DNA of 64,000 bases from Auanema rhodensis (GCA_964057225.1 OZ059895.1:9982001-10046000); one strand, 5' to 3'; counted from the stretch's first letter, positions 45,001 through 64,000 are shown. Made by a program: numbers and translations. Notes: generated by a model not told the origin, from the sequence alone.

Positions 45001-47716
45001 AGCAGTTTAATTTAGATAGCTCAACCAAAGAAGAGCAAAATATCTTCAATCTTATTTCCATATTACAGTCATAAACCAGTAGGTAATAAAACTTCATCTT
45101 GAATTTACTGTTTCTATCTATTTCCTATCGAAACAAACATTGTTTAAACACTATACAACTGTAAAACCTTTTTTAATTTATTGTATTTGAAGCTCATAAG
45201 ATTTGATCTAATCGAGGGATCCAGATGGAACGTGGAAAATTACATAACTAACATGAAGTTGGAAAAAAAACCATAACGAGGATAATTAGGTAAACCATTG
45301 AATATCAGATATTTTCTCTTACGACCATACCACGTTGAAAGTACGCCATGCAACTGATTTTCAATTTTATCTTTTCCGTAACAAATGTTTTCAATTTTCA
45401 AGCACTTTTACTTAGATAGCTCAACCAAAGCAAAGCAAATTATCTTCAATTTTATTTCTATATTACAGTTATAAACCAGTAGTTAATGAAAATTCATCTT
45501 GAATTTACTGTTTCTATCTATTCCCTATCAAAACAAACATTGTTTAAACACTATGCAACTATGAAACCTTTCTTAATTCATTGTACTTGGAGCTCATAAG
45601 ATTTGATATCATTGAGGGATACAAATGAAACGTGGAACATTACATAACTAACATGAAATTAGAAAAAAAACTATAACGGGGATGAGTATGTTAACCATTG
45701 AATATCAGATATTTTCGCTTACGACCATACCACGTTGAAAGTACGCCATACAGCTGATTTTCAATTTTATCTCTTCCGTAACAAATGTTTTCAATTTTCA
45801 AGCAGTTTTACTTAGATAGCTCAACCAAAGGAGAGCAAATTATCTTCAATCTTTTTCCTATATTACAGTTATAAACCAGTAGCTATTGAACCTTCATCTT
45901 AACTTTCCTGTTTCTATCTATTTCCTATCAAAACAAACATTGTTTAAACACTATGCAACTATGAAACCTTTTTTAATTTATTGTATTTGGAACTCATAAG
46001 AATTGATATCATTGAGGGATCCAGATGAAACGTGGAAAATTACATAACTAACATGAAATTGGAGAAAAAACTATAACAAGGATAAGCAGGTAATCCATTG
46101 AATATCAGATATTTTCGCTTACGACTATACCACGTTAAAAGTACGCCATACAGCTGATTTTCAATTTTATCTCTTCCGTAACAAATGTTTTCAATTTTCA
46201 AGCACTTTTACTTGGATAGCTCAACCAAAGAAAAGCAAATTATCTTCAATTTTATTTCTATATTACAGTTATAAACCAGTAGGTAATGAAACTTCATCTT
46301 GACTTTACTGTTTCTATCTATTTCCTATCGAAACAAACATTGTTTAAACACTATACAACTGTAAAACCTTTTTTAATTTATTGTATTTGAAGCTTATAAG
46401 ATTTGATATCATCGAGGGATCCAGATGGAAGGTGGAAAATTACATAACTAACATGAAATTGGAAAAAAAACTATAACGGGGATAAGTATTTTAACGATTG
46501 AATATCAGATATTTTCGCTTACGACCATACCACCTTGAAAGTACGCCATACAGCTGATTTTCAATTTTATCTCTTCTGTAACAAATGTTTTCAATTTTCA
46601 AGCAGTTTTACTTAGATAGCTCAACCAAAGGAGAGCAAATTATCTTCAATCTTATTTCTATATTAAAGTTATAAACCAGTAGTTATTGAACCTTCATCTT
46701 AACTTTACTGTTTCTATCTATTTCCTATCAGAACAAACATTATTTAAACATTATGCAACTATGAAACCTTTTTTAACTTATTGTATTTGGAGCTCATAAG
46801 ATTTGATATCATCGAGGGATCCAAATGGAACGTGGAAAATTACATAACTAACATGAAATTGGAGAAAAAACTATAACAAGGATAAGTAGGTAAACCATTG
46901 AATATCATATATTTTCGCTTACGACTATACCACGTTAAAAGTACGCCATACAGCTGATTTTCAAATTTATCTTTTCCGTAACAAATGTTTTCAATTTTCA
47001 AGCACTTTTACTTGGATAGCTCAACCAAAGGAAAGCAAATTTTCTTCAATCTTATTTCTATATTACAGTTATAAACCAGTAGGTAATGAACCTTCATCTT
47101 GACTTCACTGTTTTTATCTTTTTCCTATCGAAACAAACATTGTTTAAACACTATGCAACTGTGAAACCTTTTTTAATTTATTGTATTTGGAGCTCATAAG
47201 ATTTGATATCATCGAGGGATCCTGATGGAACGTGGAAAATTACATAACTAACATAAAATTTGAAAAAAAACTATAACGAGGATAAGTAGGTAAACCATTG
47301 AATATCAGATATTTTCGCTTACGACTATACCACGTTGAAAGTACGCCATGCAGCTGATTTTCAATTTTAACTCTTCTATAACAAATTTTTCCAATTTTCA
47401 AGCATTTTAACTTAGATAGCTCAACCAAACGAGAGCAAATTATCTTCAATCTTATTTCTATATTGCAGTTATAAACCAGTAGGTAATGAACCTTCGTCTT
47501 GACTTCACTGTTTTTATCTTTTTCCTATCGAAACAAACATTGTTTAAACACTATGCAACTGTGAAACCTTTTTTAATTTATTGTATTTGGAGCTCATAAG
47601 ATTTGATATCATCGAGGGATCCTGATGGAACGTGGAAAATTACATAACTAACATAAAATTTGAAAAAAAACTATAACGAGGATAAGTAGGTAAACCATTG
47701 AATATCAGATATTTTC

Positions 47717-47835
47717 GCTTACGACCATACCACGTTGAAAGTACGCCATCCTGTCCGATCTGGCAAGTCAAGCAACGTTGGGCCCGGTTAGTACTTGGAT
47801 CGGAGACGGCTTGGGAATCCCGGGTGCCGTAAGCT
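47717..47835 (+). rRNA. 5S rRNA: 5S rRNA gene, full length (119 nt), C36T variant
   Basis: GCTTACGACCATACC...CCGATCTGGCAAGTCAAGCAACG...AGTACTTGGATCGGAGAC...GTGCCGTAAGCT closely resembles nematode 5S as I recall it. Helix I ends pair (GCTTACG/CGTAAGC); A-box and C-box regions present; oligo-T follows. Confidence 0.96.
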
Positions 47836-47849
47836 TTTCAAATTTTTTT
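47835..47849 (+). terminator. Pol III terminator (T4 then T7)
   Basis: TTTTCAAATTTTTTT directly at the 5S 3' end. Confidence 0.85.
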
Positions 47850-47891
47850 AACGATCATAACAAGTTGAAAGTACGCCATGCAGCTGATTTT
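47848..47891 (+). pseudogene. Degenerate mini-5S remnant downstream of 5S copy 1
   Basis: TTAACGATCATAACAAGTTGAAAGTACGCCAT is an imperfect direct repeat of 5S nt 2-33 at 130-bp offset, followed by GCAGCTGATTTT. Confidence 0.8.
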
Positions 47892-49443
47892 CAATTTTAA
47901 CTCTTCTGTAACAACTTTTTTCAATTTTGAAGCAGTTTTACTTGGATAGCTCAACCAAAGCAGAGCAAAATATCTACAATCTTATTTCTATATTACAGTT
48001 ATGAACCAGTAGTTATTGAACCTTCATCTTAACTTTACTGTTTCTATCTATTTCCTATCGAAACAAACATTGTTTAAACACTATGCAACTGTGAAACCTC
48101 TTCAATTTATTGCATTTGGAGCTCATAAGATTTGATATCATCGAGGGATCCTGATGGAACGTGGAAAATTACATAACTAACATGAAATTGGAAAAAAAAC
48201 TAAAACGAGGATAAGTATGTTAACCATTGAATATCAGATATTTTCGCTTACGACCATACTACGTTAAAAGTACGCCATACAGCTGATTTTTAATTTTATC
48301 TCTTCCGTAACAAATGTTTTCAATTTTCAAGCATTTTTACTTAGATAACTCAACCAAAGGAGAGCAAATTATCTTCATTCTTATTTCTATATTACAGTTA
48401 TAAACCAGTAGTTATTGAACCTTCATCTTAACTTTACTGTTTCTATCTATTTCCTATCGAAACAAACATTGTTTAAACACTATGCAACTGTGAAACCTCT
48501 TCAATTTATTGCATTTGGAGCTTATAAGATTTGATATCATCGAGGGATCCTGATGGAACGTGGGAAATTACATAACTAACATTAAATTGGAAAAAAAACT
48601 AAAACGAGGATAAGTATGTTAACCATTGAATATCAGATATTTTCGCTTACGACCATACCACGTTAAAAGTACGCCATACAGCTGATTTTTAATTTTATCT
48701 CTTCCGTAACAAATGTTTTCAATTTTCAAGCATTTTAACTTAGATAGCTCAACCAAACGAGAGCAAATTATCTTCAATCTTATTTCTATATTGCAGTTAT
48801 AAACCAGTAGGTAATGAACCTTCGTCTTGACTTCACTGTTTTTATCTTTTTCCTATCGAAACAAACATGGTTTAAACACTATGCAACTGTGAAACCTCTT
48901 CAATTTATTGCATTTGGAGCTTATAAGATTTGATATCATCGAGGGATCCTGATGGAACGTGGGAAATTACATAACTAACATTAAATTGGAAAAAAACCAA
49001 AACGAGGATAAGTATGTTAACCATTGAATATCAGATATTTTCGCTTACGACCATACCACGTTGAAAGTACGCCATGCAGCTGATTTTCAATTTTAACTCT
49101 TCTATAACAAATTTTTTCAATTTTCAAGCATTTTAACTTAGATAGCTCAACCAAACGAGAGCAAATTAATCTTCAATCTTATTTCTATATTGCAGTTATA
49201 AACCAGTAGGTAATGAACCTTTGTCTTGACTTCACTGTTTTTATCTATTTCCTATCGAAACAAACATTGTTTAAACACTATGCAACTGTGAAACCTTTTT
49301 TAATTTATTGTATTTGGAGCTCATAAGATTTGATATCATCGAGGGATCCTGATGGAACGTGGAAAATTACATAACTAACATAACATTTGAAAAAAAACTA
49401 TAACGAGGATAAGTAGGTAAACCATTGAATATCAGATATTTTC

Positions 49444-49457
49444 GCTTACGACCATAC
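49444..49457 (+). pseudogene. 5S rRNA: 5' fragment (nt 1-14) of the retrotransposon-interrupted 5S gene
   Basis: GCTTACGACCATAC abuts the LTR start TGT. The upstream monomer variant is the one that precedes the other two 5S genes. Confidence 0.9.
49453..49457 (+). repeat. Left target-site duplication CATAC (5S nt 10-14)
   Basis: CATAC flanks both ends (49453-49457 and 57804-57808); removing the element plus one copy restores a perfect 5S gene. Confidence 0.93.
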
Positions 49458-49898
49458 TGTCGGCAAATGCCTGACTATTAACAAAATATAATGATTTACA
49501 ATATAAACATAACTCTTCTGAAATACTAAACCATTATCTATTAACCGAATAATTGTATCATTAACCTATTGCGCAACATTCTCAAAGGATGTTGAACTTT
49601 TATCACCTCTATAGTTTACATTAACGTGACCTTTCTATTCAAATATCAAATATCACCCTTAAGCTAAATCATATATAAACCCAAGAAACCTTCACTTTAA
49701 TATCTAACTTTTCTACCACTGTACCATCTTTATTTAATAAACCTTTTAAACCCAAATCTGCGAAGTTCAACCCTGATAATATTCTCTTCGAGTATCAACC
49801 TTCGTTAATACTCCTAAACGGTATTAACTCCTGTATCACGTCGAACGAGTAATACTACAGCTATTCCCCTGGAATAACTCTTGGATTCATAGTCCAAA
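49458..49898 (+). repeat. 5' LTR (441 bp; TGTCGG...TCCAAA)
   Basis: Direct repeat of 57363-57803 with no difference seen by eye. Confidence 0.96.
49672..49679 (+). promoter_or_regulatory. Candidate LTR TATA box (TATATAAA)
   Basis: Mid-LTR position about 60 bp upstream of AATAAA, the usual U3-R arrangement. AT-rich context lowers certainty. Confidence 0.55.
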
Positions 49899-49899
49899 T

Positions 49900-49909
49900 T
49901 GGTGCATCG
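49900..49909 (+). promoter_or_regulatory. Primer-binding site TGGTGCATCG, likely tRNA-Gly(GCC)
   Basis: Begins 1 nt after the 5' LTR; complementary to ...CGAUGCACCA-3', the 3' end of nematode tRNA-Gly(GCC) as I recall it. Confidence 0.8.
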
Positions 49910-50161
49910 TCCAAATCAGGTATCAATTGTTAGAAACCTTTTTGTATTAATTTCTATTCTCACTTTTTATTTCTCAGTTCCTTTGTTTACTTTTCTTCAT
50001 CATCACATTCTTTAAACTTCTTTGCTTCATCTCATCTCATCTGAATCTCTATCTCTATCTCAATCTCAAAATCAAAAAAGTTACCAACACATTTTGCAAC
50101 AATTCAACTAAGAAATTCAAAAGTCATACATTTTGCATCAAAAAATCAAAAAACGGTAGGA

Positions 50162-53100
50162 ATGGACCGTACTGAAGAAGTTTTCAATGAAAAACTCCAC
50201 AATTTCGCAGACAAATTTGAGCAACTAGCCAAACTACTCATAAAAACTAAAACCGAGAACCAAGAAAACATTTCGCTTCTACGCCTACACACATCTCTCA
50301 CACAACTTAGGTCTGAAGAATCATCTCTCGCTACTCTTGCTTCTCTTCTCCCCGAACCTACGTTTTCTGAATTGAACAGAAGAATAAACGAGGTAACCAC
50401 GCTTCATGCTGACACAGTAACAAGAGCGAACATCCTGATTTTGGAACTAGAAACCAAAACAGCTAAAAAACAACCCCTCCCCGATTCCGAAGACGACCAA
50501 GAGTCGGATCGGAATAAAAGACCAACGCGAACTAGCTTTGGTCTCTCCGTTAAAACACCTCAACTTTCGATTCCCACATTTAACGGAGACTCCTTAACAT
50601 TTCCACTCTTTTGGAACCAATTCAAAACCCTCATTCACAATGAACCTAGCCTAAATATACAACAGAAAAACATTTTTTTGGCAGAAGCCCTACAAGGACC
50701 TGCCAGGGTTCATCTCGAGAATAAGCCTTTAAACGGCGAATTTTATCACCAAATAATCGAAACCTTACAAAACACATATCAACCGATATTAGCGGTTGAC
50801 TTTCGCATATACCGTAATATCAGGAGATTACCTGTCGCAAAATCCGACCCCACCTCTTTGAGATCCCGAGTTAATGAGATTCGAGCTTTGCTCGACCAAC
50901 TCGACAGAGCAAGATCTCAATATATATACAATACTGAAGACCCAGCTTGGGTCACAGAGATATCTGAGAAATTTCCTGAAGAAATTATAGATATGCGCTG
51001 TTGGCGATCGCCCGGCGAAAATACTATAAGTCAAATTCTGAAGGACATAGAGGGTATAGCATACTCAAAGGAAACCTCGGCTTATTTAAGACGAGAACGA
51101 TCCGAACCTCAGTATCGAGACCAAACTCAGCCCTTTTTCTCAAAACCCATCAAATCCTCAGAAAAATCAGAACGACCCTGCGTTTTTTGCGATAAGCAGG
51201 GTCATCGCCCTACAAAATGCCCCACGATAACCACCCCCCAAGAACGAAGAGAGATTATAAAGAGAAAAAATAGGTGTTGGATTTGCTTTAGTCCAACACA
51301 CTCAAGCAGTAAGTGCAAATTCGAAAGTTGCCGAAACTGCAAAAAAGAGCATAATTATACTTTATGCCTACCTAAGCCAACCATCAAAATTACTAAACCG
51401 TCCATGAATTGCACCACTATATCTAAATCTTTCCATCCTTCTCCCGCTTACCTCATGACTTCTCAAATCTCTCTCTTAAATCCTTTAACAAACACTTATC
51501 ATACTAAAACCATATTTCTTGACCCCGGAGCAACTCAAAGCTTCATCCATCAAAAGACAGCTGAGACATGCAACTTGAATACCTTAGCAACACAAAACAT
51601 TACAGCAACCGGATTTTCGGGCAATAAAGAAACTTTTGAAACAAAAACAGTCGAAGCTATTTTGCAAACCCCATATGGAAAAATAATTAAACTAATTTTG
51701 CTGACATCCCCAAAACCACTCACCGGAAACCTAAAATGCTGTTCTCTACAAATCCGGGATAGAGAATTTCTTGAAAAAACCAAAATTTCCGTCACCAATC
51801 AATTCATTAATGGGGAAACATTCTCACCCGACATTTTGTTAGGTATGGATTGGTATGATTCAGTAATAACTGAAGAGCCATCCATTTCATTACCATCGGG
51901 TCTAAAAATTAAACACACCCACTTTGGTCCCTGTATTTATGGAAAAACAAATAATACCCATGAATCCATAGCCGTCCATTCCTTAATCATAAACCCTCAA
52001 ATACCGGAGGAAGTTATGATTAAACAATTATTCGAAATAGATAGTTTGGGCATTGCTCCACATGAAGGAGCTTTGAACAAATCAGAACTATTCTATAACG
52101 AATATTCTACTTTACTTACGTTTGATAACGGCTACATAACCGCCCCTCTCCCACTAAAGAAAAACGCCATAAATATTCAATCTAACCGTAATCTTGCTTT
52201 GGCAACACTTAATCGTCTTCAAATATCTTTACAAAAAGACCCCAATCAACAAAAATACTATCAAGAAACGTTCTCACAATATTTAAAAGAAAACGTAATA
52301 GAGTTAGTCCCGGCAGATGTTGAGGCGACCAGAACTTATTATATGCCACATCGCGGTGTGTGGAAACCCCAAAAAACCAAGCCTCTTCGCATAGTCTTTA
52401 ACGCATCTGCTAAACAAAAAGGACAACTCTCTCTAAATGACATAACCTCAACAGGTGAGAGCTTCACCAACAAAATTCTCGATATCTTGATAGGTATTCG
52501 TACCAAATCGTATTTTCTGATGTGTGATATTGAAGGTGCTTTCACACAAATACGCATAGCTAATGATTGTAAAGATCTCTGTCGCTTTCTTTGGTTGAAA
52601 GATGTCAATAAGCCGCCTACACCAAACAATATAATAGAATTTCGATTTAATAGGTTAGCTTTTGGCATTACGGCAAGCCCCGCTGTATTAAACATGTCGT
52701 TACACGCGTATTTGAATAGCCACACCTCACCATTTGTAGAAAAAACCCTAAGATATCTTTATGTAGATAATATTTTTTATACAACCAATGATCAAAAAGA
52801 ACTAACCGATTTATATAAAGATTCAAAGAAAATATTCTCTCAAATTTCGATGAATGTTAGAGAATACTTTAGTAACTCATCCCATTTTAACAACGAAATT
52901 CCGGCGATAGATCACCACCCAGATAAAAATCCCAAAATACTAGGTGTACTATATAACGCCAGTAAAGATTCGTTTGTATTAACAGGACAAATGCGTATGC
53001 AACAGTCTTTTACTAAACGCGATATGCTGAGTAGTTTACACAGCATATATGACCCCATAGGACTAGCGGCACCGCTCCTACTTCCATATAAAATTATTTT

Positions 53101-56100
53101 AAGACAAGTAATGAACAGCAATGTCGATTGGAAGGAGCAAGTCCCCGAGGATCTCGTCGCCGATTGGAACAAAGCCAGCACAAAGATAGGGCCGTTCAAC
53201 ATTGAAGTTCCGCGGGAATTATCTAGCAAAAGAGACAAGAAAGAACTGTGGGTTTTTGTAGACGCAAGCACAAAAGCTATTGCAGCATGCGCCTATTTAA
53301 CTACCAGCACAGAAAGAGCTCCAATCATAATGGGGAAAGTAAAATTAGCCCCCAAAAATAGGACTTTGACCATCCCGCGCTTAGAACTATCCGCAATTTT
53401 TATGGGAATGAAAATCGCGGAAACAATATACAATAATTTGAACAAGCCGAATCTGGCAATTAACATTGCGTCAGATAGCCAAATAGCTCTATCTTGGCTT
53501 ATAACGAAAAAAAGTGTCCCCGTTTTTATCAGTAATATGCGGCAAAACATTGAAGAAATAGGAAGAAGGTTGGAAGCTCAAAAAGCTTCACTACACTTCC
53601 ACTATGTTGATACCGACCATAATCCAGCAGACATTGGAACTAGAGGGACAACAGACCAAAATCTGTTAAAGGAACGCTGGTTGTTTTCTCCACCATGGCT
53701 ATCACAAATGGACAACAGACCAATAAAGGAACTCACCGCTCCAATAGACGAAGACGAACCCCCCATGCTCATTCTACCCGTATCTACTGATATTCAATCA
53801 TACGAGTCAATAATACAACCAGGAAGATTTAATTCGTACTCCAAACTACAACGGACCACAGGTTTGGTATTTAAAGCCGCGCTAGTACTATTGCAGAAAA
53901 TAAACAAAACCCCAACATCAACCATGCTACAACGAGCGCAAAAGGAAAAGCAGCAATCCCAAACCGCAGATCTCTTTCTTAAACAAAAGGCCCAGAAAAA
54001 ATTAAAACAATCGGAAATAAAGCAATTTCGCACCACCAAGGATAACAACGGATTACGTATAATTCAAACACGTTTGCTTAACGCCAAATTGCCTGCATCC
54101 ACAAAGTACCCCTTTTTACTACCCAAAAATTCTGATTTAGGTAAACTAATTTTGCTTTCCATACATAAAGAAAATGCACACCTGGGAACTACACATCTGA
54201 TCAGCCTATTTCTTCAAAAGTTCTTCATGGCAGGAACAAGGCAGGTATGCAAATCAATTATAAAAAAGTGCGTCCCGTGTCAAAAAATACTCAGTCGCCC
54301 ATTCACCACAGATTTTCTGGCACCTCTGCCAGAAGATCGAATTACAAAAGCTATGCCATTTAAGCATACGGGGCTAGACTGTATCGGACCCATTAAATAT
54401 AGAAACAGTGAACAAATATATATAGTAATCTTTACATGTCTAACGGTTCGAGCAGTTCACCTCGAACCAATTAACGACATGACCTCTAATACATTCCTCA
54501 ATGCATTTATAAGATTCGTAGCTCGCAGAGGATTACCGGACGTTATCCGTTCGGACAATGGGAGCAATTTTGTTCACTCGGCTAAGATACTTAACATGTT
54601 AGAAACTTATGATAGTGAACATAGAACAAGTTTCACAAAATTTTTACAAAAACACCACATTACATGGATTTTTAACACTCCCAGTGCCCCATGGACTGGA
54701 GGAGTATGGGAGCGACTGGTTGCGATAGTAAAAACTTCGCTCTACAAATCATTGCAGCTTAAATTGGTCAACAAAGACCAACTAACGACGGCAATTATAA
54801 AGATCGAAGGAATAATAAATTCCAGACCGATCACCTATACAAATTCAGATAATGTAGACGACCGACCCCTGACACCAGCAGATTTCTTGAATAACGGCAG
54901 CCCCGTTCTCGTACCAGGAGGTAACGTAGAACAATTGGGACAAGCCTTGGATGAACCAAACCCAATACAAACGAATAAAGAAGCCTTTGAAATTCTGCAG
55001 AAAGTGGAAATTATAGCGGAATCATTCTGGGATCGGTGGTCCAAGGAATATCTTCTATGTCTCCGTAATGCCCACGCATCCACAAAACAAACGCACAGAA
55101 GTTCTAACCACCCAACGCTAAATGAGGTGGTCCTTGTGGAAGAAGATAACCTGAACAGATGCAACTGGCAAATGGCGCGCATTACTGCCCTACTACCGTC
55201 TTCGGATAACATATTCAGATCCGCAAGAATTAAATTAGGAAACGGCAAAGAACTCACGAAACCAGTTGAAAAACTCTACCCACTCGAGCTCAAGGACAAT
55301 TTCGACAAAGGAAGAGAATCACAGGAAATAACTGTCAATCATCTTTCACACATACCAACCAATCCGAACCGGCTAAGGAACATTTTTCGTTTTCTGATGC
55401 TAATACAAATATTTTCAGTTGCTATGACCCAACCGATAATCAGGTGTTCAACATCACAAGTGGTATTTCCAGCACAACCAAACCACTCAACAATATGCAT
55501 CGACTCCAGCTGCCATAATCTCTCTGCACACCAATCCGAAATAATCCCACTACCTATTTCAGTTTTACCAAAAACAGCATCCGTTTCACGCTTCAACTTG
55601 GAGTCAACTCAGAATCAAACATGCAAACTTCCTCACCCATGTGACTTCCCACCGCCATTCATCCTACATATCATAGGCAATCCTCACTGTAATCCAATCT
55701 TAGCTATTCTTATAGTACTTACGCCATTAATTGGCTGCGCTCTTTTATTCATTAGCTGTGGTCTAATCTACAGAAGACTAAGAACATACCGCCGACAGAA
55801 CGAGCCCACCATTTCGTACATCCCTTCCCTCCTATTCACACTCTTTTTTCTCATATGCCAGGCGCAAGCTTGTGGATCCCCCAACGCTCATAAAAACATA
55901 GAAATCTTTTGCGACGATATACAAAACTGCACCAAAATAACCAACGAAGAAATTTCATTCAATCCCTTACAAAACTCTCTCTGCTCCTACATCAAATATC
56001 AAAACTCCACTATAGGCAAACTAGAAATTCAATTAATTCAACATAAATTTTCATGCCAAAAAGTTTCGCAAGGATTCACTAGAATAACTAACCTAACCAT

Positions 56101-57379
56101 TCACTCCTCTCATAGATGCGCCGGTACAACTCATTGCCCCTGGGGCACCGGATGCGATGATATTCGACAGGATACATTTGTATCCGAACTATATTCTGCA
56201 TACGAAAATCCTGGAAGAACCTACTGCACCAGAGCCGGAGGAGGACTATTCAACAGCTGTGGACTTCCTATAGAAGGATGCATTTTATTTAGACCAACTT
56301 ATCAACCAGAGAACAAAGAAGTATACGAAGAGATCAAATGCATACAATGGAAGCAAGAAGTGCAAGCAAAATTAACGATCATATACCTCAACAACACTCA
56401 AAAATACGACATTTTGCTACAGCCCTACCGAAAATACGAGTTTCACGGAATATCATTACAGATTTTGTCAGTCACAGCAAAAGCAACAACGGAACTGTAC
56501 AACAAAATTTTTTTAACATCTGAGACAAACAACTACATGATAACGGAGCAAATAAAACCAGCTGTTATATGCAGCAATGCAAGAATGGCGGCAGATAAGT
56601 TTAATGCATGCCACATAAGAAAGCCTTGCCCATGTTTGGGGGCCGCAGCACAGCTCTCTTGCAATTGCGATTCAGCGACGCAAAGAGAACTGAAAAAATA
56701 TGAGCTTCCAAAAATTAATACGAATTATAGGATAACAAAAGAAGCAGGAACTATAACAGTTCTATCAAAAATGGAAGAATCAACGCTCACAATGCAAAAC
56801 CCGCAATTTAGCATCGAATGTCTATACACTAATAGACATCCTTGTTTTTCAGATTTTCAAATGATAACAGGATGTTATAAATGCAGAGAAGGAACAACGC
56901 TAAACATGACATGTGAAACAAAGGACGAGTTAAATGCAATACTGAACTGCGATTCCTTTTCTACTATAATTCGATGCTCCGACAAAAATCCCGCCACAAC
57001 GATAAAACTATACTTCAATGAACCCAAAGTACAAGAAAATTGTACTCTAACATGCGGAAGAGCAACAAAGCAATTTATCCAGCTAAGTACCAGATTACAC
57101 TACATAAGTGACACTACAATTTCAGAAGAACTGATCAAACTACATAATGGAACATCTGGACTCTCTTGGAATCTCCCCAACTTGGAACCTCTAATAGAAG
57201 TGATCCAGAATAATTGGAAATGGATCGTACCCGTCGTAGCTGCAGTCACAGCATGTTCATATATCTTATACACAGCCCTCTCCTTTCTCGCTCCTTTCCT
57301 TCTACCAGCTATCCTCTCTTATTGCTGTTTGAAAAAATCAAATCGCAACCCTCGCCCGGCAATGTCGGCAAATGCCTGA
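50162..57379 (+). CDS. gag-pol-env: Gag-Pol-Env polyprotein, 2,405 aa, of a BEL/Pao retrotransposon
   Basis: IPTFNGDSLTFPLFW (DUF1759-like Gag); three zinc knuckles; FLDPGATQSF protease; DIEGAF/RLAFG/YVDN RT; FVDAS/PRLEL/SDSQ/NPAD RNase H; HHCC + DDE integrase; Cys-rich glycoprotein with transmembrane segments. The stop lies inside the 3' LTR. Confidence 0.97.
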   Translation: MDRTEEVFNEKLHNFADKFEQLAKLLIKTKTENQENISLLRLHTSLTQLRSEESSLATLASLLPEPTFSELNRRINEVTTLHADTVTRANILILELETKTAKKQPLPDSEDDQESDRNKRPTRTSFGLSVKTPQLSIPTFNGDSLTFPLFWNQFKTLIHNEPSLNIQQKNIFLAEALQGPARVHLENKPLNGEFYHQIIETLQNTYQPILAVDFRIYRNIRRLPVAKSDPTSLRSRVNEIRALLDQLDRARSQYIYNTEDPAWVTEISEKFPEEIIDMRCWRSPGENTISQILKDIEGIAYSKETSAYLRRERSEPQYRDQTQPFFSKPIKSSEKSERPCVFCDKQGHRPTKCPTITTPQERREIIKRKNRCWICFSPTHSSSKCKFESCRNCKKEHNYTLCLPKPTIKITKPSMNCTTISKSFHPSPAYLMTSQISLLNPLTNTYHTKTIFLDPGATQSFIHQKTAETCNLNTLATQNITATGFSGNKETFETKTVEAILQTPYGKIIKLILLTSPKPLTGNLKCCSLQIRDREFLEKTKISVTNQFINGETFSPDILLGMDWYDSVITEEPSISLPSGLKIKHTHFGPCIYGKTNNTHESIAVHSLIINPQIPEEVMIKQLFEIDSLGIAPHEGALNKSELFYNEYSTLLTFDNGYITAPLPLKKNAINIQSNRNLALATLNRLQISLQKDPNQQKYYQETFSQYLKENVIELVPADVEATRTYYMPHRGVWKPQKTKPLRIVFNASAKQKGQLSLNDITSTGESFTNKILDILIGIRTKSYFLMCDIEGAFTQIRIANDCKDLCRFLWLKDVNKPPTPNNIIEFRFNRLAFGITASPAVLNMSLHAYLNSHTSPFVEKTLRYLYVDNIFYTTNDQKELTDLYKDSKKIFSQISMNVREYFSNSSHFNNEIPAIDHHPDKNPKILGVLYNASKDSFVLTGQMRMQQSFTKRDMLSSLHSIYDPIGLAAPLLLPYKIILRQVMNSNVDWKEQVPEDLVADWNKASTKIGPFNIEVPRELSSKRDKKELWVFVDASTKAIAACAYLTTSTERAPIIMGKVKLAPKNRTLTIPRLELSAIFMGMKIAETIYNNLNKPNLAINIASDSQIALSWLITKKSVPVFISNMRQNIEEIGRRLEAQKASLHFHYVDTDHNPADIGTRGTTDQNLLKERWLFSPPWLSQMDNRPIKELTAPIDEDEPPMLILPVSTDIQSYESIIQPGRFNSYSKLQRTTGLVFKAALVLLQKINKTPTSTMLQRAQKEKQQSQTADLFLKQKAQKKLKQSEIKQFRTTKDNNGLRIIQTRLLNAKLPASTKYPFLLPKNSDLGKLILLSIHKENAHLGTTHLISLFLQKFFMAGTRQVCKSIIKKCVPCQKILSRPFTTDFLAPLPEDRITKAMPFKHTGLDCIGPIKYRNSEQIYIVIFTCLTVRAVHLEPINDMTSNTFLNAFIRFVARRGLPDVIRSDNGSNFVHSAKILNMLETYDSEHRTSFTKFLQKHHITWIFNTPSAPWTGGVWERLVAIVKTSLYKSLQLKLVNKDQLTTAIIKIEGIINSRPITYTNSDNVDDRPLTPADFLNNGSPVLVPGGNVEQLGQALDEPNPIQTNKEAFEILQKVEIIAESFWDRWSKEYLLCLRNAHASTKQTHRSSNHPTLNEVVLVEEDNLNRCNWQMARITALLPSSDNIFRSARIKLGNGKELTKPVEKLYPLELKDNFDKGRESQEITVNHLSHIPTNPNRLRNIFRFLMLIQIFSVAMTQPIIRCSTSQVVFPAQPNHSTICIDSSCHNLSAHQSEIIPLPISVLPKTASVSRFNLESTQNQTCKLPHPCDFPPPFILHIIGNPHCNPILAILIVLTPLIGCALLFISCGLIYRRLRTYRRQNEPTISYIPSLLFTLFFLICQAQACGSPNAHKNIEIFCDDIQNCTKITNEEISFNPLQNSLCSYIKYQNSTIGKLEIQLIQHKFSCQKVSQGFTRITNLTIHSSHRCAGTTHCPWGTGCDDIRQDTFVSELYSAYENPGRTYCTRAGGGLFNSCGLPIEGCILFRPTYQPENKEVYEEIKCIQWKQEVQAKLTIIYLNNTQKYDILLQPYRKYEFHGISLQILSVTAKATTELYNKIFLTSETNNYMITEQIKPAVICSNARMAADKFNACHIRKPCPCLGAAAQLSCNCDSATQRELKKYELPKINTNYRITKEAGTITVLSKMEESTLTMQNPQFSIECLYTNRHPCFSDFQMITGCYKCREGTTLNMTCETKDELNAILNCDSFSTIIRCSDKNPATTIKLYFNEPKVQENCTLTCGRATKQFIQLSTRLHYISDTTISEELIKLHNGTSGLSWNLPNLEPLIEVIQNNWKWIVPVVAAVTACSYILYTALSFLAPFLLPAILSYCCLKKSNRNPRPAMSANA
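50558..51368 (+). other. gag: Gag region: DUF1759-like domain plus three Cys/His knuckles
   Basis: CVFCDKQGHRPTKC, CWICFSPTHSSSKC, CRNCKKEHNYTLC: the BEL-type triple knuckle. Boundaries approximate. Confidence 0.85.
51440..51945 (+). other. Aspartic protease domain (catalytic D at 51521, D-P-G motif)
   Basis: IFLDPGATQSFI and downstream PDILLGMD. Boundaries approximate. Confidence 0.8.
52300..53700 (+). other. pol: Reverse transcriptase and Pao-type RNase H domains
   Basis: YYMPHRGV, LRIVFNAS, DIEGAFTQI, YVDN (52760-52771), YDPIG, FVDAS (D at 53261), NPADIGTRG. Boundaries approximate. Confidence 0.92.
54100..55290 (+). other. Integrase (HHCC, DDE core, DUF5641-like C-terminal domain)
   Basis: IHKENAHLG...CVPC; D at 54377 (GLDCIGP), D at 54554 (SDNGSNF), E at 54710 (GGVWERLV), 51 aa between the second D and E; FWDRWSKEYL...KLYPLE. 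Confidence 0.92.
55379..57379 (+). other. env: Env-like region: signal peptide, short Cys-rich Gn-like domain with TM, second signal, phlebovirus Gc(G2)-like class II fusion protein, C-terminal TM
   Basis: Hydrophobic NIFRFLMLIQIFSVA; TM ILAILIVLTPLIGCALLFISCGLIY; signal SLLFTLFFLICQAQA|C (55871); HRCAGTTHC, PGRTYC, GCILFR, GCYKCREG motifs like the G2 env of nematode Cer-type elements; TM WKWIVPVVAAV... Confidence 0.85.
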
Positions 57380-57803
57380 CTATTAACAAAATATAATGAT
57401 TTACAATATAAACATAACTCTTCTGAAATACTAAACCATTATCTATTAACCGAATAATTGTATCATTAACCTATTGCGCAACATTCTCAAAGGATGTTGA
57501 ACTTTTATCACCTCTATAGTTTACATTAACGTGACCTTTCTATTCAAATATCAAATATCACCCTTAAGCTAAATCATATATAAACCCAAGAAACCTTCAC
57601 TTTAATATCTAACTTTTCTACCACTGTACCATCTTTATTTAATAAACCTTTTAAACCCAAATCTGCGAAGTTCAACCCTGATAATATTCTCTTCGAGTAT
57701 CAACCTTCGTTAATACTCCTAAACGGTATTAACTCCTGTATCACGTCGAACGAGTAATACTACAGCTATTCCCCTGGAATAACTCTTGGATTCATAGTCC
57801 AAA
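57363..57803 (+). repeat. 3' LTR (441 bp)
   Basis: Copy of 49458-49898 at offset 7,905. Confidence 0.96.
57641..57646 (+). terminator. Candidate polyadenylation signal AATAAA in the 3' LTR
   Basis: Canonical hexamer downstream of the TATA-like motif (also 49736-49741 in the 5' LTR). Confidence 0.55.
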
Positions 57804-57913
57804 CATACCACGTTGAAAGTACGCCATCCCGTCCGATCTGGCAAGTCAAGCAACGTTGGGCCCGGTTAGTACTTGGATCGGAGACGGCTTGGGAATCCCG
57901 GGTGCCGTAAGCT
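57804..57913 (+). pseudogene. 5S rRNA: 3' part (nt 10-119, including right TSD CATAC) of the interrupted 5S gene
   Basis: Matches nt 10-119 of the intact copy at 60718; internal control region and oligo-T terminator intact. Confidence 0.94.
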
Positions 57914-57925
57914 TTTCAAATTTTT

Positions 57926-57969
57926 TTAACGATCATAACACGTTGAAAGTACGCCATGCAGCTGATTTT
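57926..57969 (+). pseudogene. Degenerate mini-5S remnant downstream of 5S copy 2
   Basis: TTAACGATCATAACACGTTGAAAGTACGCCAT GCAGCTGATTTT, 130-bp offset from the gene's own 5' segment. Confidence 0.8.
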
Positions 57970-60717
57970 CAATTTTAACTCTTCTATAACAAATTTTTTC
58001 AATTTTCAAGCAGTTTTACTTGGATAGCTCAACCAAAGCAGAGCAAAATATCTACAATCTTATTTCTATATTACAGTTATAAACCAGTAGTTATTGAACC
58101 TTCATCTTAACTTTAGTGTTTCTATCTATTTCCTATCGAAACAAACATTGCTTAAACACTATGCAACTGTGAAACCTCTTCAATTTATTGCATTTTGAGC
58201 TTATAAGATTTGATATCATCGAGGGATCCTGATGGAACGTGGAAAATTACATAACTAACATGAAATTGGAAAAAAAACTAAAACGAGGATAAGTATGTTA
58301 ACCATTGAATATCAGATATTTTCGCTTACGACCATACTACGTTAAAAGTACGCCATGCAGCTGATTTTCAATTTTAACTCTTCTGTAACAAATGTTTTCA
58401 ATTTTCAAGCATTTTAACTTAGATAGCTCAACCAAACGAGAGCAAATTATCTTCAATCTTATTTCTATATTGCAGTTATAAACCAGTAGGTAATGAACCT
58501 TAGTTTTGACTTCACTGTTTTTATCTTTTTCCTATCGAAACAAACATTGTTTAAACACTATGCAACTGTGAAACCTTTTTTAATTTATTGTATTTGGAGC
58601 TCATAAGATTTGATATCATCGAGGGATCCTAATGGAACGTGGAAAATTACATAACTAACATAAAATTTGAAAAAAAACTAAAACGAGGATAAGTATGTTA
58701 ACCATTGAATATCAGATATTTTCGCTTACGACCATACTACGTTAAAAGTACGCCATACAGCTGATTTTCAATTTTATCTCTTCCGTAACAAATGTTTTCA
58801 ATTTTCAAGCATTTTTACTTAGATAACTCAACCAAAGGAGAGCAAATTATCTTCATTCTTATTTCTATATTACAGTTATAAACCAGTAGTTATCAAACCT
58901 TCATCTTAACTTCACTGTTTCTATCTATTTCCTATCGAAACAAACATTGTTTAAACACTATGCAACTTTGAAACCCTTTTTAATTTATTGTTTTTGGAGC
59001 TCATAAGATTTGATATCATCGAGGGATCCTGATGGAACGTGGAAAATTACATAACTAACATTAAATTGGAAAAAAAACTGAAACGAGGATAAGTATGTTA
59101 ACCATTGAATATCAGATATTTTCGCTTACGACCATACCACGTTAAAAGTACGCCATACAGCTGATTTTTAATTTTATCTCTTCCGTAACAAATGTTTTCA
59201 ATTTTCAAGCATTTTAACTTAGATAGCTCAACCAAACGAGAGCAAATTATCTTCAATCTTATTTCTATATTGCAGTTATGAACCAGTAGGTAATGAACCT
59301 TCGTCTTGACTTCACTGTTTTTATATTTTTCCTATCGAAACTAACATTGTTTAAACACTATGCAACTGTGAAACCTTTTTTAATTTATTGTATTTGGAGC
59401 TCATAAGATTTGATATCATCGAGGGATCCTGATGGAACCTGGAAAATTACATAACTAACATGAAATTGGAAAAAAAACTAAAACGAGGATAAGTATGTTA
59501 ACCATTGAATATCAGATAATTTCGCTTACGACCATATCACGTTAAAAGTACGCCACACAGCTAATTTTTAATTTTATCTCCGTAACAAAAGTTTTCAATT
59601 TTCAAGCATTTTAACTTAGATAGCTCAACCAAAGGAAAGCAAATTATCTTCAATCTTATTTCTTTATTACAGTTATAAACCAGTAGTTATTGAACCTTCG
59701 TCTAGACTTTACTGTTTTTATCCATTTCCTATCAAAACAAAAATTGTTTAAACACTATACAACTATGAAACCTTTTTTAATTTATCGTATTTGAAGCTCA
59801 TAAGATTTGATATCATCGAGGGATCCTGATGGAACGTGGAAAATTACATAACTGACAAAAAATTTGAAAAAAAACTATAACGAGGATAAGTATGTTAACC
59901 ATTGAATATCAGATATTTTCGCTTACGACCATACCACGTTAAAAGTACGCCATACAGCTGAGTTTTAATTTTATCTCTTCCGTAACAAATGTTTTCAATT
60001 TTCAAGCATTTTAACTTAGATAGCTCAACCAAACGAGAGCAAATTATCTTCAATCTTATTTCTATATTGCAGTTATAAACCAGTAGGTAATGAACCTTCG
60101 TCTTGACTTCACTGTTTTTATCTTTTTCCTATCGAAACTAACAATGTTTAAACACTACGCAACTGTGAAACCTTTTTTAATTTATTGTATTTGGAGCTCA
60201 TAAGATTTGATATCATCGAGGGATCCTGATGGAACGTGGAAAATTACATAACTAACATGAAATTGGAGAAAAAACTAAAACGAGGATAAGTATGTTAACC
60301 ATTGAATATCAGATAATTTCGCTTACGACCATACCACGTTAAAAGTACGCCACACAGCTAATTTTTAATTTTATCTCCGTAACAAAAGTTTTCAATTTTC
60401 AAGCATTTTAACTTAGATAGCTCAACCAAAGGAAAGCAAATTATCTTCAATCTTATTTCTATATTACAGTTATAAACCAGTAGTTATTGAACCTTCGTCT
60501 AGACTTTACTGTTTTTATCCATTTCCTATCAAAACAAACATTGTTTAAACACTATACAACTATGAAACCTTTTTTAATTTATCGTATTTGAAGCTCATAA
60601 GATTTGATATCATCGAGGGATCCTGATGGAACGTGGAAAATTACATAACTAACATAAAATTTGAAAAAAAACTATAACGAGGATAAGTAGGTAAACCATT
60701 GAATATCAGATATTTTC

Positions 60718-60836
60718 GCTTACGACCATACCACGTTGAAAGTACGCCATCCCGTCCGATCTGGCAAGTCAAGCAACGTTGGGCCCGGTTAGTACTTGGA
60801 TCGGAGACGGCTTGGGAATCCCGGGTGCCGTAAGCT
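60718..60836 (+). rRNA. 5S rRNA: 5S rRNA gene, full length (119 nt)
   Basis: Complete nematode-type 5S sequence with CCCGTCCGATC loop region, helix I complementarity and downstream T runs. Confidence 0.97.
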
Positions 60837-60850
60837 TTTCAAATTTTTTT
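60836..60850 (+). terminator. Pol III terminator (T4 then T7)
   Basis: TTTTCAAATTTTTTT at the 5S 3' end. Confidence 0.85.
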
Positions 60851-60892
60851 AACGATCATAACACGTTGAAAGTACGCCATGCAGCTGATTTT
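60849..60892 (+). pseudogene. Degenerate mini-5S remnant downstream of 5S copy 3
   Basis: Same 130-bp-offset imperfect direct repeat of the 5S 5' end. Confidence 0.8.
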
Positions 60893-63800: not shown

Positions 63801-64000
63801 AGTTATCAAACCTTCATCTTAACTTCACTGTTTCTATCTATTTCCTATCGAAACAAACATTGTTTAAACACTATGCAACTTTGAAACCCTTTTTAATTTA
63901 TTGTTTTTGGAGCTCATAAGATTTGATATCATCGAGGGTTCCAGATGGAACGTAGAAAATTACATAACTAACATGAAATTGGAAAAAAAACAATAACGAG

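What the first reader, a model, noticed from the sequence alone, without database searches (positions are those of the whole stretch)
49444..57913. Env-bearing BEL/Pao retroelement inserted inside a complete 5S gene while ~135 promoterless look-alike sites are empty: candidate 5S/Pol III-targeting element
Seen: the element splits a full 5S gene after nt 14 (TSD = nt 10-14), in sense orientation. Only 3 of ~138 units carry a complete 5S with its internal promoter, yet all monomers contain the same or nearly the same ~33-nt 5' segment and upstream flank. Complete 5S genes make up under 1% of the non-element DNA here. Known: Ty3 integrates at Pol III start sites through TFIIIB/TFIIIC tethering, and 5S promoters are internal (TFIIIA on A-box/IE/C-box). 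I know of no 5S-specific BEL/Pao family. Inference: local sequence cannot explain the choice, so the integrase may be guided by an assembled Pol III complex or its open chromatin. The satellite acts as a built-in negative control. This rests on one insertion.
Basis: partly seen in the sequence, partly recalled or inferred. Interest (0 to 1): 0.9.

Follow-up and report, generated by a model that had tools for sequence, protein, structure and literature searches.

The report
Intact endogenous virus splitting a 5S gene
A very young, unbroken virus-like retroelement of a kind already known from nematodes sits inside one of only three complete 5S rRNA genes in an array of about 135 truncated look-alike repeats; this hints at, but with a single insertion cannot prove, a preference for working 5S genes.

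Summary
An 8,346-bp LTR element (49458-57803, + strand) has identical 441-bp LTRs and a 5-bp target duplication (CATAC, 5S nt 10-14). It splits a complete 5S gene in sense orientation. The window holds two more complete 5S genes and 135 truncated 400-bp units that share the gene's upstream flank and nt 1-33.

The element has one unbroken 2,405-codon gag-pol-env frame with BEL/Pao signatures and a phlebovirus Gc-like fusion protein. It is a divergent new member of the known "Atlas-like" nematode belpaoviruses.

The targeting idea stays a candidate. Only 26 truncated units match the complete gene exactly over -20..+33, and none match beyond. Many units have identical or near-identical siblings, so the empty sites are not 135 independent controls. 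Chance of the observed placement is 0.006 by length, 0.02 by unit and 0.10 among exact local matches. No other copy or solo LTR is in the window, and no near-identical protein is on record.

I put a real bias toward complete 5S genes through Pol III machinery or open chromatin at about 0.4.

The parts
1..47716 (+). 5S-derived satellite of ~400-bp units. Each unit starts with the 5S upstream flank plus 5S nt 1-33. No complete 5S gene.
   Evidence: TRF period 400, 118.9 copies, 86-92% matches; anchor scan and blastn
47717..47835 (+). Complete 5S rRNA gene. One base differs from the other two (nt 36).
   Evidence: Rfam RF00001, 103.3 bits, model 1-120; sequence comparison
47836..49443 (+). Terminator T-run, a post-gene 5S fragment (nt 5-33, at 47851-47879) and four truncated units.
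   Evidence: TRF; anchors at 47847, 48246, 48645 and 49043
49444..49457 (+). Left piece of the split 5S gene (nt 1-14). Its last 5 nt (49453-49457, CATAC) are the left copy of the target-site duplication.
   Evidence: Identical to nt 1-14 of the intact gene
49458..49898 (+). 5' LTR, 441 bp. Termini are TG...AA.
   Evidence: 441/441 identical to the 3' LTR; identity stops at both ends
49899..49920 (+). Putative primer-binding region directly after the 5' LTR (T then TGG...). The primer tRNA is not identified.
   Evidence: Sequence read directly; position only, so this is inference
50162..57379 (+). Single uninterrupted gag-pol-env reading frame of 2,405 codons, with 0 internal stops and 0 frameshifts. 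The stop codon lies 17 nt inside the 3' LTR.
   Evidence: the ORF listing; translation check
50579..50986 (+). Gag core (Pfam DUF1759, the BEL/Pao gag family), aa 140-275.
   Evidence: E 6.8e-11 in the whole protein, 2.8e-12 on the piece
51179..51367 (+). Nucleocapsid with three CCHC-type zinc knuckles, aa 340-402.
   Evidence: Motif scan
51509..51646 (+). Aspartyl protease region, aa 450-495 (weak match).
   Evidence: PF13975, E 9e-4, below the curated cut-off
52424..52858 (+). Reverse transcriptase, aa 755-899. The catalytic motif reads YVDN at aa 867.
   Evidence: PF00078, E 2.9e-7; motif
53012..53479 (+). Pao-type pol signature domain (Pfam Peptidase_A17), aa 951-1106.
   Evidence: E 2.4e-38
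54131..55285 (+). Integrase: HHCC zinc domain (aa 1324-1375), catalytic core rve (aa 1406-1508) and BEL/Pao C-terminal domain DUF5641 (aa 1613-1708).
   Evidence: PF17921 E 8.7e-7, PF00665 E 1.1e-7, PF18701 E 1.1e-17
55286..55909 (+). 208-aa stretch between integrase and Gc. It has one strongly hydrophobic segment (aa 1846-1864) and no recognisable Gn domain.
   Evidence: No Pfam match at E<=0.1; hydrophobicity; 25-28% identity to the same stretch of four relatives
55910..57331 (+). Envelope protein: phlebovirus Gc-like class II fusion domain (aa 1917-2210), Gc C-terminal domain (aa 2228-2306) and C-terminal membrane anchor (aa 2355-2390).
   Evidence: PF07245 E 2.1e-45, PF19019 E 1.7e-4; PDB 7a4a E 4e-22 over aa 1919-2322; hydrophobicity
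57363..57803 (+). 3' LTR, 441 bp.
   Evidence: Identical to the 5' LTR
57804..57913 (+). Right piece of the split 5S gene (nt 10-119). Its first 5 nt (57804-57808, CATAC) are the right copy of the target-site duplication.
   Evidence: Identical to nt 10-119 of the intact gene; Rfam 81.5 bits, model 10-110
57914..60717 (+). Terminator T-run, a post-gene 5S fragment (57929-57957) and seven truncated units.
   Evidence: TRF; anchors
60718..60836 (+). Complete 5S rRNA gene.
   Evidence: Rfam 107.5 bits, model 1-120
60837..64000 (+). Terminator T-run, a post-gene 5S fragment (60852-60880) and truncated units running to the window's end.
   Evidence: TRF; anchors

Best explanation
Shown: the feature is an intact, very recently integrated endogenous belpaovirus (a BEL/Pao LTR retroelement) of the Atlas-like kind known from nematodes. 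It has two identical 441-bp LTRs and one unbroken gag-protease-RT-RNase H-integrase-envelope polyprotein. The envelope part is a phlebovirus Gc-like class II fusion protein. A 5-bp duplication of 5S nt 10-14 marks the insertion, as expected of integrase-mediated insertion. The element lies in a complete 5S rRNA gene, in the gene's orientation, within a 5S-derived satellite. The insertion cuts off the first 9 nt of helix I of that gene copy, so that copy is no longer a normal 5S gene.

Inferred: the site was probably not chosen blindly. The integration machinery likely favoured the start region of a complete, Pol III-competent 5S gene. That region may be open and bound by the Pol III apparatus, whereas the surrounding truncated units lack the internal promoter and are probably packed as satellite chromatin. 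The evidence cannot separate a specific protein tether from simple accessibility. The anatomy is near certain (>0.95). The confidence given here is for the site-preference part.
For: Anatomy.

Recency: LTRs are 441/441 identical, against a median of about 91% identity between neighbouring monomers.

Placement: 1 insertion in the 0.64% of array DNA that is complete 5S gene (357/55,654 bp). 26 truncated units are identical to the gene over -20..+33, and 64 over nt 5-19; all are empty. No solo LTR or element fragment lies in any truncated unit of the window.

Truncated units have no 5S-like match and lack everything from nt 34 on. In the 5S genes that have been studied, that region holds the internal control region (general knowledge; diagram legend in PMC10946416).

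The site (+10..+14) lies at the downstream edge of the region that Pol III/TFIIIB opens in yeast (TFIIIB -40..-5, bubble -9..+11; PMC6673722).

Precedent exists for retroelements that use Pol III genes as safe havens in compact genomes (PMC5911963).
Against: There is one insertion only.

Among units with an exactly matching local site the chance value is 3/29 = 0.10. Counted by monomer lineage it is about 3/12.

Many empty units may be as young as the insertion: 37% of the measured monomers have an identical sibling.

Every known Pol III-tethered retroelement inserts outside the gene and spares it (Ty3 1-4 bp upstream, Tj1 1-10 bp upstream, others further). This one destroys the copy.

The integrase shows only the standard BEL/Pao domains and no extra module.

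Expression of these array-embedded 5S genes and their chromatin state are unknown.

No metazoan LTR element with Pol III-gene targeting turned up in the papers searched.
Confidence: 0.42

Rival explanations
1. Chance. The element integrates without regard to 5S genes. It landed in a repeat array where insertions are harmless and persist, and by luck hit one of the three complete genes. The case came to notice only because the coincidence is striking.
For: There is a single event. A reader who flags coincidences will find some. Repeat arrays accumulate mobile elements (review PMC10946416). No second copy, solo LTR or fragment in the window supports a pattern. No targeting domain is visible. The empty look-alike sites are fewer and less independent than they seem.
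Against: By length, the chance of hitting a complete gene given one insertion in this array is 0.0064. By unit it is 0.022. The insertion lies close to the 5S start, a region that Pol III-directed elements use in other organisms.
Confidence: 0.36
2. Recognition of the 5S DNA sequence itself, as in elements that home to one nucleotide position of a multicopy RNA gene. Either the recognised stretch reaches past nt 33 or into the upstream variants, so only complete genes qualify. Or it lies within the shared block, and hitting a complete gene rather than a truncated unit was luck.
For: The insertion is inside the gene, as with sequence-specific elements of rRNA and small RNA genes (Dada-5S, R2 and others), not beside it. 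All truncated units diverge from nt 34, only 20 bp from the insertion point, and none matches the complete genes over -40..+33. If an exact match within -20..+33 sufficed, a hit in a complete gene still has a chance of 0.10.
Against: In the papers read, strict sequence specificity was reported for non-LTR retrotransposons and some DNA transposons, not for LTR elements with retroviral-type integrases (PMC3706591 abstract). No DNA-binding module beyond the standard integrase domains was found. 26 identical local sites are empty.
Confidence: 0.15
3. Artefact: assembly error or a chimeric read joins an element to a 5S array.
For: Satellite arrays are hard to assemble. Raw reads cannot be examined here.
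Against: The two flanks fit one 5S gene exactly with a clean 5-bp duplication. Upstream and downstream flanks are 96-99% identical to those of the other two complete units. That is the signature of a true integration, not of a misjoin.
Confidence: 0.02

Closest known systems
Atlas virus and the Atlas-like clade of endogenous belpaoviruses in nematodes (Ancylostoma ceylanicum and others; PMC9094657, bioRxiv 10.64898/2026.03.22.711591)
   Same: LTR element with identical LTRs. One Gag-Pol-Env polyprotein without stops. BEL/Pao pol. YVDN in place of YxDD in RT. Three zinc knuckles in the nucleocapsid. Phlebovirus Gc-like class II fusion protein. The solved Atlas Gc structure 7a4a is the best PDB match, E 4e-22.
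   Different: It is much diverged: pol core at most 40% identical and the whole protein 32-38% identical to strongylid relatives, with the envelope 60% identical to a protein of Auanema sp. JU1783. It is shorter (2,405 against 2,828 aa) with longer LTRs (441 against 271 nt). No Gn domain is recognisable, and the integrase-to-Gc stretch of 208 aa is the shortest of those compared. The papers read give no integration site for Atlas.
Ty3 of Saccharomyces cerevisiae and Tj1 of Schizosaccharomyces japonicus (Pol III start-site-directed LTR retrotransposons; PMC5911963, PMC6673722)
   Same: LTR retroelements whose integration depends on a promoter-competent Pol III gene, 5S genes included, and occurs within a few bp of the transcription start. 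This is the behaviour the finding proposes.
   Different: They belong to a different family (Ty3/gypsy, in fungi). They insert 1-4 or 1-10 bp upstream of the start and leave the gene intact. Here the insertion is 10-14 bp inside the transcribed region and splits the gene. Their specificity rests on hundreds of insertions and on binding to TFIIIB; here there is one insertion and no binding evidence.
Sequence-specific elements of 5S genes: Dada-5S DNA transposons of fish (PMC8869645) and the non-LTR element Mutsu (listed for zebrafish 5S in PMC10946416)
   Same: They insert inside the 5S gene of a multicopy array and use redundancy as a safe haven.
   Different: They use different enzymes (a transposase or an endonuclease that reads primary sequence) and are not LTR elements. 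Their specificity is documented on many copies.
5S-derived satellite DNAs (e.g. PcP190 of frogs, PMC11675491)
   Same: A tandem repeat family descended from 5S rDNA units, as in the host array here.
   Different: PcP190 keeps about 120 bp similar to the transcribed region. The units here keep only nt 1-33 plus the spacer.

Membership tests
BEL/Pao LTR retroelements (Belpaoviridae) | Pol order protease - RT - RNase H - integrase, flanked by LTRs | tested here: met
   Domain order in the single ORF; 441-bp LTRs
BEL/Pao LTR retroelements (Belpaoviridae) | Family-specific protein signatures (Pfam Peptidase_A17, DUF1759, DUF5641) | tested here: met
   E 2.4e-38, 6.8e-11 and 1.1e-17; the listed homologues carry the same set
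BEL/Pao LTR retroelements (Belpaoviridae) | Short target-site duplication (4-6 bp, from my own knowledge of the family) | tested here: met
   5-bp CATAC at both junctions
BEL/Pao LTR retroelements (Belpaoviridae) | Placement inside the family in an RT phylogeny | not tested
   No tree was built; membership rests on profile matches and on the ranking of hits
Atlas-like nematode belpaoviruses | Single Gag-Pol-Env polyprotein | tested here: met
   One ORF of 2,405 codons, no stop or frameshift
Atlas-like nematode belpaoviruses | Phlebovirus Gc-like class II fusion protein | tested here: met
   PF07245 E 2.1e-45; PDB 7a4a E 4e-22
Atlas-like nematode belpaoviruses | Phlebovirus Gn-like part upstream of Gc | tested here: not met
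   No PF07243 or other match in aa 1700-1920 at E<=0.1. There is only weak similarity to the same stretch of relatives. A diverged or reduced Gn is not excluded.
Atlas-like nematode belpaoviruses | Three zinc knuckles in the nucleocapsid; YVDN in RT | tested here: met
   Motif scan; features as described
Atlas-like nematode belpaoviruses | Atlas-like capsid fold | not tested
   Only the Pfam DUF1759 match is available; no structure was predicted
Pol III-gene-directed retroelements (Ty3-like behaviour) | Many independent insertions at a fixed distance from Pol III transcription starts | not testable with these tools
One copy in the window. No near-identical protein is on record.
Pol III-gene-directed retroelements (Ty3-like behaviour) | Dependence on a promoter-competent target | tested here: inconclusive
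   1 of 3 complete genes is occupied, against 0 of 135 truncated units. The chance value is 0.02 to 0.10 or more, depending on the null.
Pol III-gene-directed retroelements (Ty3-like behaviour) | Insertion beside the gene, leaving it functional | tested here: not met
   Insertion after nt 14 splits the gene; Rfam matches only model positions 10-110 on the right piece
Pol III-gene-directed retroelements (Ty3-like behaviour) | Contact between integrase and TFIIIB, TFIIIC or Pol III subunits | not testable with these tools
   Host proteins are unknown; no extra integrase module was seen
Sequence-specific elements of multicopy RNA genes | Same nucleotide position occupied in many gene copies | not testable with these tools
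   One copy only
Sequence-specific elements of multicopy RNA genes | Target defined by primary sequence around the site | tested here: inconclusive
   26 empty units are identical over -20..+33, but all differ from nt 34 and none is identical over -40..+33

The most novel reading that the evidence does not exclude
This belpaovirus lineage integrates preferentially at the start region of complete, Pol III-competent 5S genes by reading the assembled transcription complex or its chromatin rather than the local DNA sequence. It would be the first animal LTR retroelement or endogenous virus, and the first BEL/Pao member, with Pol III-gene-directed integration, and its geometry (+10..+14, inside the gene) is unlike Ty3.
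Probability: 0.3. Interest if true: 0.8.

Novelty: new member of a known kind. Interest (0 to 1): 0.5.

Why it matters
Retroelements directed to Pol III genes are known from yeasts and social amoebae, where they show how integrases are steered by host factors and how mobile elements survive in compact genomes. The papers searched here describe none in animals. If this lineage proved to be 5S-directed, it would show that such steering arose independently in a third retroelement family. It would also offer a natural contrast, within one array, between promoter-bearing and promoterless versions of the same site.

As it stands, the secure result is smaller. This is a divergent, apparently unbroken Atlas-like endogenous virus in a rhabditid-like nematode, which extends the known range of that clade, sitting in a neatly documented 5S-derived satellite.

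Tried and rejected
**Searches that found nothing**
- Other traces of the element in the window: blastn of the element against the rest gave only 33-nt chance matches (E 0.45), so no solo LTR.
- Near-identical proteins elsewhere: three protein searches (whole, envelope, pol core) gave best identities of 38%, 60% and 40%. The family and probably the host are not on record.
- Other RNA genes: none in the truncated units (Rfam at E<=1), and no tRNA genes in the window.
- A Gn domain or any extra domain next to the integrase: none.
- Literature on a 5S-specific BEL/Pao or any animal LTR element directed to Pol III genes: none found.
- Searches failed on term format and were re-sent where needed.

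**Scenarios considered and rejected**
- Insertion into a truncated unit followed by recombination that turned it into a complete gene. The exchange would have to fall within the 24 shared nucleotides (nt 10-33) right of the element, in the short time allowed by identical LTRs.
- An LTR ending in CA with a longer, imperfect duplication. Both LTRs carry the same final AA, so the 5-bp reading is simpler.

- In my private reasoning I twice wrote sequence from memory: a nematode 5S rRNA, and a few letters of a murine retrovirus LTR/primer-site junction.

Full report
**What is in the window**

The window is almost entirely one tandem repeat of about 400 bp. It has 30% G+C and 86-94% identity between copies. 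The repeat is interrupted at 49458-57803 by an 8,346-bp block of 38-41% G+C.

Rfam finds exactly three 5S rRNA genes, all on the + strand:
- a complete gene at 47717-47835 (103 bits)
- a complete gene at 60718-60836 (107 bits)
- a gene matching model positions 10-110 at 57804-57903

**Checking the insertion**

- The block is bounded by two direct repeats of 441 bp (49458-49898 and 57363-57803). They are identical at every position, and the identity stops sharply at both ends.
- The 14 nt left of the block equal nt 1-14 of the intact 5S gene.
- The 110 nt right of it equal nt 10-119. I compared the pieces apart.
- Five bases, CATAC (nt 10-14), are therefore present at both junctions. This is a target-site duplication of the length expected for this kind of element.
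- The 100 nt on either side are 96-99% identical to the flanks of the other two complete genes.
- The element's coding strand is the 5S strand.

This is a true integration, not a misjoin.

**The element**

Between the LTRs lies a single open reading frame of 2,405 codons (50162-57379), with no internal stop and no frameshift. No gene of this element is broken.

Pfam finds, in order:
- the BEL/Pao gag family DUF1759
- a weak aspartyl protease match
- reverse transcriptase
- the Pao signature Peptidase_A17 (E 2.4e-38)
- the integrase zinc domain and catalytic core
- the BEL/Pao integrase C-terminal domain DUF5641
- a phlebovirus glycoprotein G2 (Gc) fusion domain (E 2.1e-45) with its C-terminal domain

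The best solved structure is 7a4a (E 4e-22). It is the envelope protein of Atlas virus, an intact endogenous belpaovirus of the hookworm Ancylostoma ceylanicum (PMC9094657).

The polyprotein also shows the hallmarks those authors list:
- YVDN instead of YxDD in the RT
- three zinc knuckles in the nucleocapsid
- a cysteine-rich Gc with a C-terminal membrane anchor

So 'env-bearing BEL/Pao element' is right, but the kind is already described, including the single gag-pol-env frame and identical LTRs.

It is a distant member of that kind:
- The whole protein is 32-38% identical to proteins of Haemonchus, Ancylostoma and Necator.
- The pol core is at most 40% identical.
- The envelope part is 60% identical to an unnamed protein of Auanema sp. 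JU1783. This points to a rhabditid host near Auanema without proving it.
- No Gn domain is recognisable.
- The stretch between integrase and Gc is 208 aa, shorter than in the eight relatives measured (275-460 aa).
- The integrase shows no domain beyond the family's standard ones.

**The array as a control**

An anchor on 5S nt 6-33 finds 141 units:
- the two intact genes
- the right part of the split gene
- three short 5S fragments (nt 5-33) that follow each complete gene by 130 bp
- 135 truncated units

Truncated units share the gene's upstream flank and nt 1-33. They diverge completely from nt 34, and a stretch of them has no 5S-like Rfam match even at E<=1. They therefore lack the part of the gene that carries the internal promoter in the 5S genes that have been studied. 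This last point is general knowledge and was not tested in this host.

1. Only 26 of 135 truncated units are identical to the complete gene over -20..+33. 64 are identical over nt 5-19. 26%, 25% and 46% differ at nt 10, 18 and 21.
2. No truncated unit equals the complete genes over -40..+33, and all differ from nt 34, which is 20 bp from the insertion point. Local sequence is excluded as the discriminator only inside about -20..+33.
3. The units are not independent or necessarily old.
   - Of the 131 measured monomers, 37% have a 100% identical sibling and 70% a >=99% identical one somewhere in the window.
   - There is no duplication of >=1 kb at >=99% identity.
   - They form 65 lineages at >=99%, of which 9 hold an exact local match.
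   - With LTRs showing 0 differences in 441 nt, some empty units may be no older than the insertion.

**How strong is one event?**

Given one insertion in this array, the chance of the observed placement depends on the null:

| Null | Ratio | Chance |
|---|---|---|
| By length (complete-gene bases / array bases) | 357/55,654 | 0.0064 |
| By unit, insertion fixed at this site | 3/138 | 0.022 |
| Units with an exact -20..+33 match | 3/29 | 0.10 |
| By monomer lineage | about 3/12 | about 0.25 |

Blind integration is disfavoured. A rule that reads only the shared block is not. The case was also flagged because it is striking. No second copy, solo LTR or fragment exists in the window. The protein collections hold nothing close enough to be another copy.

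**Mechanism**

The 5-bp duplication and the intact integrase show ordinary integrase-mediated insertion.

The site lies at the downstream edge of the region that TFIIIB and Pol III open at yeast Pol III genes (TFIIIB -40..-5, bubble -9..+11; PMC6673722). That fits an integration complex attracted to, or merely admitted by, an active start region.

It does not fit the geometry of any known Pol III-directed retroelement. All of them insert beside the gene and spare it: Ty3 1-4 bp and Tj1 1-10 bp upstream, the Dictyostelium elements further away (PMC5911963). Here the gene copy is destroyed, since helix I loses its 5' strand.

Insertion inside the gene is the habit of sequence-specific elements such as Dada-5S (PMC8869645). 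A 2013 paper states that strict target specificity had been seen only in non-LTR retrotransposons (PMC3706591). A 2024 review knows of no element inside a 5S gene in its text, although its table lists Mutsu (PMC10946416).

My estimates:
- bias toward complete 5S genes through Pol III machinery or accessibility: 0.42
- chance: 0.36
- recognition of 5S sequence: 0.15
- artefact: 0.02

**Context noticed**

Each complete gene is followed after its T-run by a 29-nt copy of 5S nt 5-33. The truncated unit therefore looks like the product of a deletion between these two direct repeats, later amplified.

A 2026 preprint reports that Auanema rhodense eliminates about two thirds of its germline genome from somatic cells. 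The eliminated DNA is mostly satellite blocks, some with sparse 5S genes. The window would fit such a block, but this is untested.

I wrote from memory a nematode 5S rRNA sequence and a few letters of a murine retrovirus LTR/primer-site junction.

**Verdict**

The element is a new, divergent and apparently unbroken member of a known kind. The 5S/Pol III-targeting reading is a reasonable but unproven candidate resting on one insertion.

Noticed in passing
window 47851-47879, 57929-57957, 60852-60880: Each complete 5S gene is followed, 130 bp after its start, by a 29-nt copy of 5S nt 5-33. The sequence after that copy is the one that follows nt 33 in truncated units. The truncated 400-bp unit thus looks like a deletion between the two direct repeats of an ancestral ~530-bp 5S unit, later amplified.
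   Followed up: partly
window 1-49457: 37% of measured monomers have a 100% identical sibling and 70% a >=99% identical one, scattered through the array. Neighbours are only about 91% alike, and no duplication of >=1 kb at >=99% identity exists. This suggests short-tract homogenisation (conversion) rather than block duplication.
   Followed up: partly
window 10072-10651 and 11962-12541: Two places, 1,890 bp apart, each hold two 290-bp units (a ~110-bp deleted variant of the monomer) with the same TRF consensus. This looks like a local duplication inside the array.
   Followed up: no
window 49458-49898 and 57363-57803: The LTRs begin with TG but end with AA, not the usual CA. The 5' LTR is followed by T then TGG..., a primer-site-like start. 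No purine-rich tract lies directly before the 3' LTR.
   Followed up: no
window 57363-57379: The gag-pol-env reading frame runs 17 nt into the 3' LTR before its stop codon, so the envelope's C-terminus is encoded by LTR sequence.
   Followed up: no
window 55286-55909: The stretch between integrase and Gc is 208 aa, shorter than in the eight relatives measured (275-460 aa). It has no recognisable Gn domain, only one strongly hydrophobic segment. The envelope may be a reduced version of the Gn-Gc module.
   Followed up: partly
whole window: The best envelope relative is from Auanema sp. JU1783 (60% identity). A 2026 preprint reports that Auanema rhodense discards most satellite blocks from somatic cells, some with sparse 5S genes. 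The array might be germline-restricted DNA, which would make it an especially harmless landing place. Neither host nor fate is established.
   Followed up: no
window 47717-47835: This complete 5S gene differs from the other two by one base (T for C at nt 36). The split gene is identical to the copy at 60718.
   Followed up: no
window 47717-64000 versus 1-47716: All three complete genes lie in the last 16 kb, separated by 4 and 7 truncated units. The first 47.7 kb (about 118 units) hold none. The window seems to span a border between a pure satellite domain and a mixed domain.
   Followed up: no
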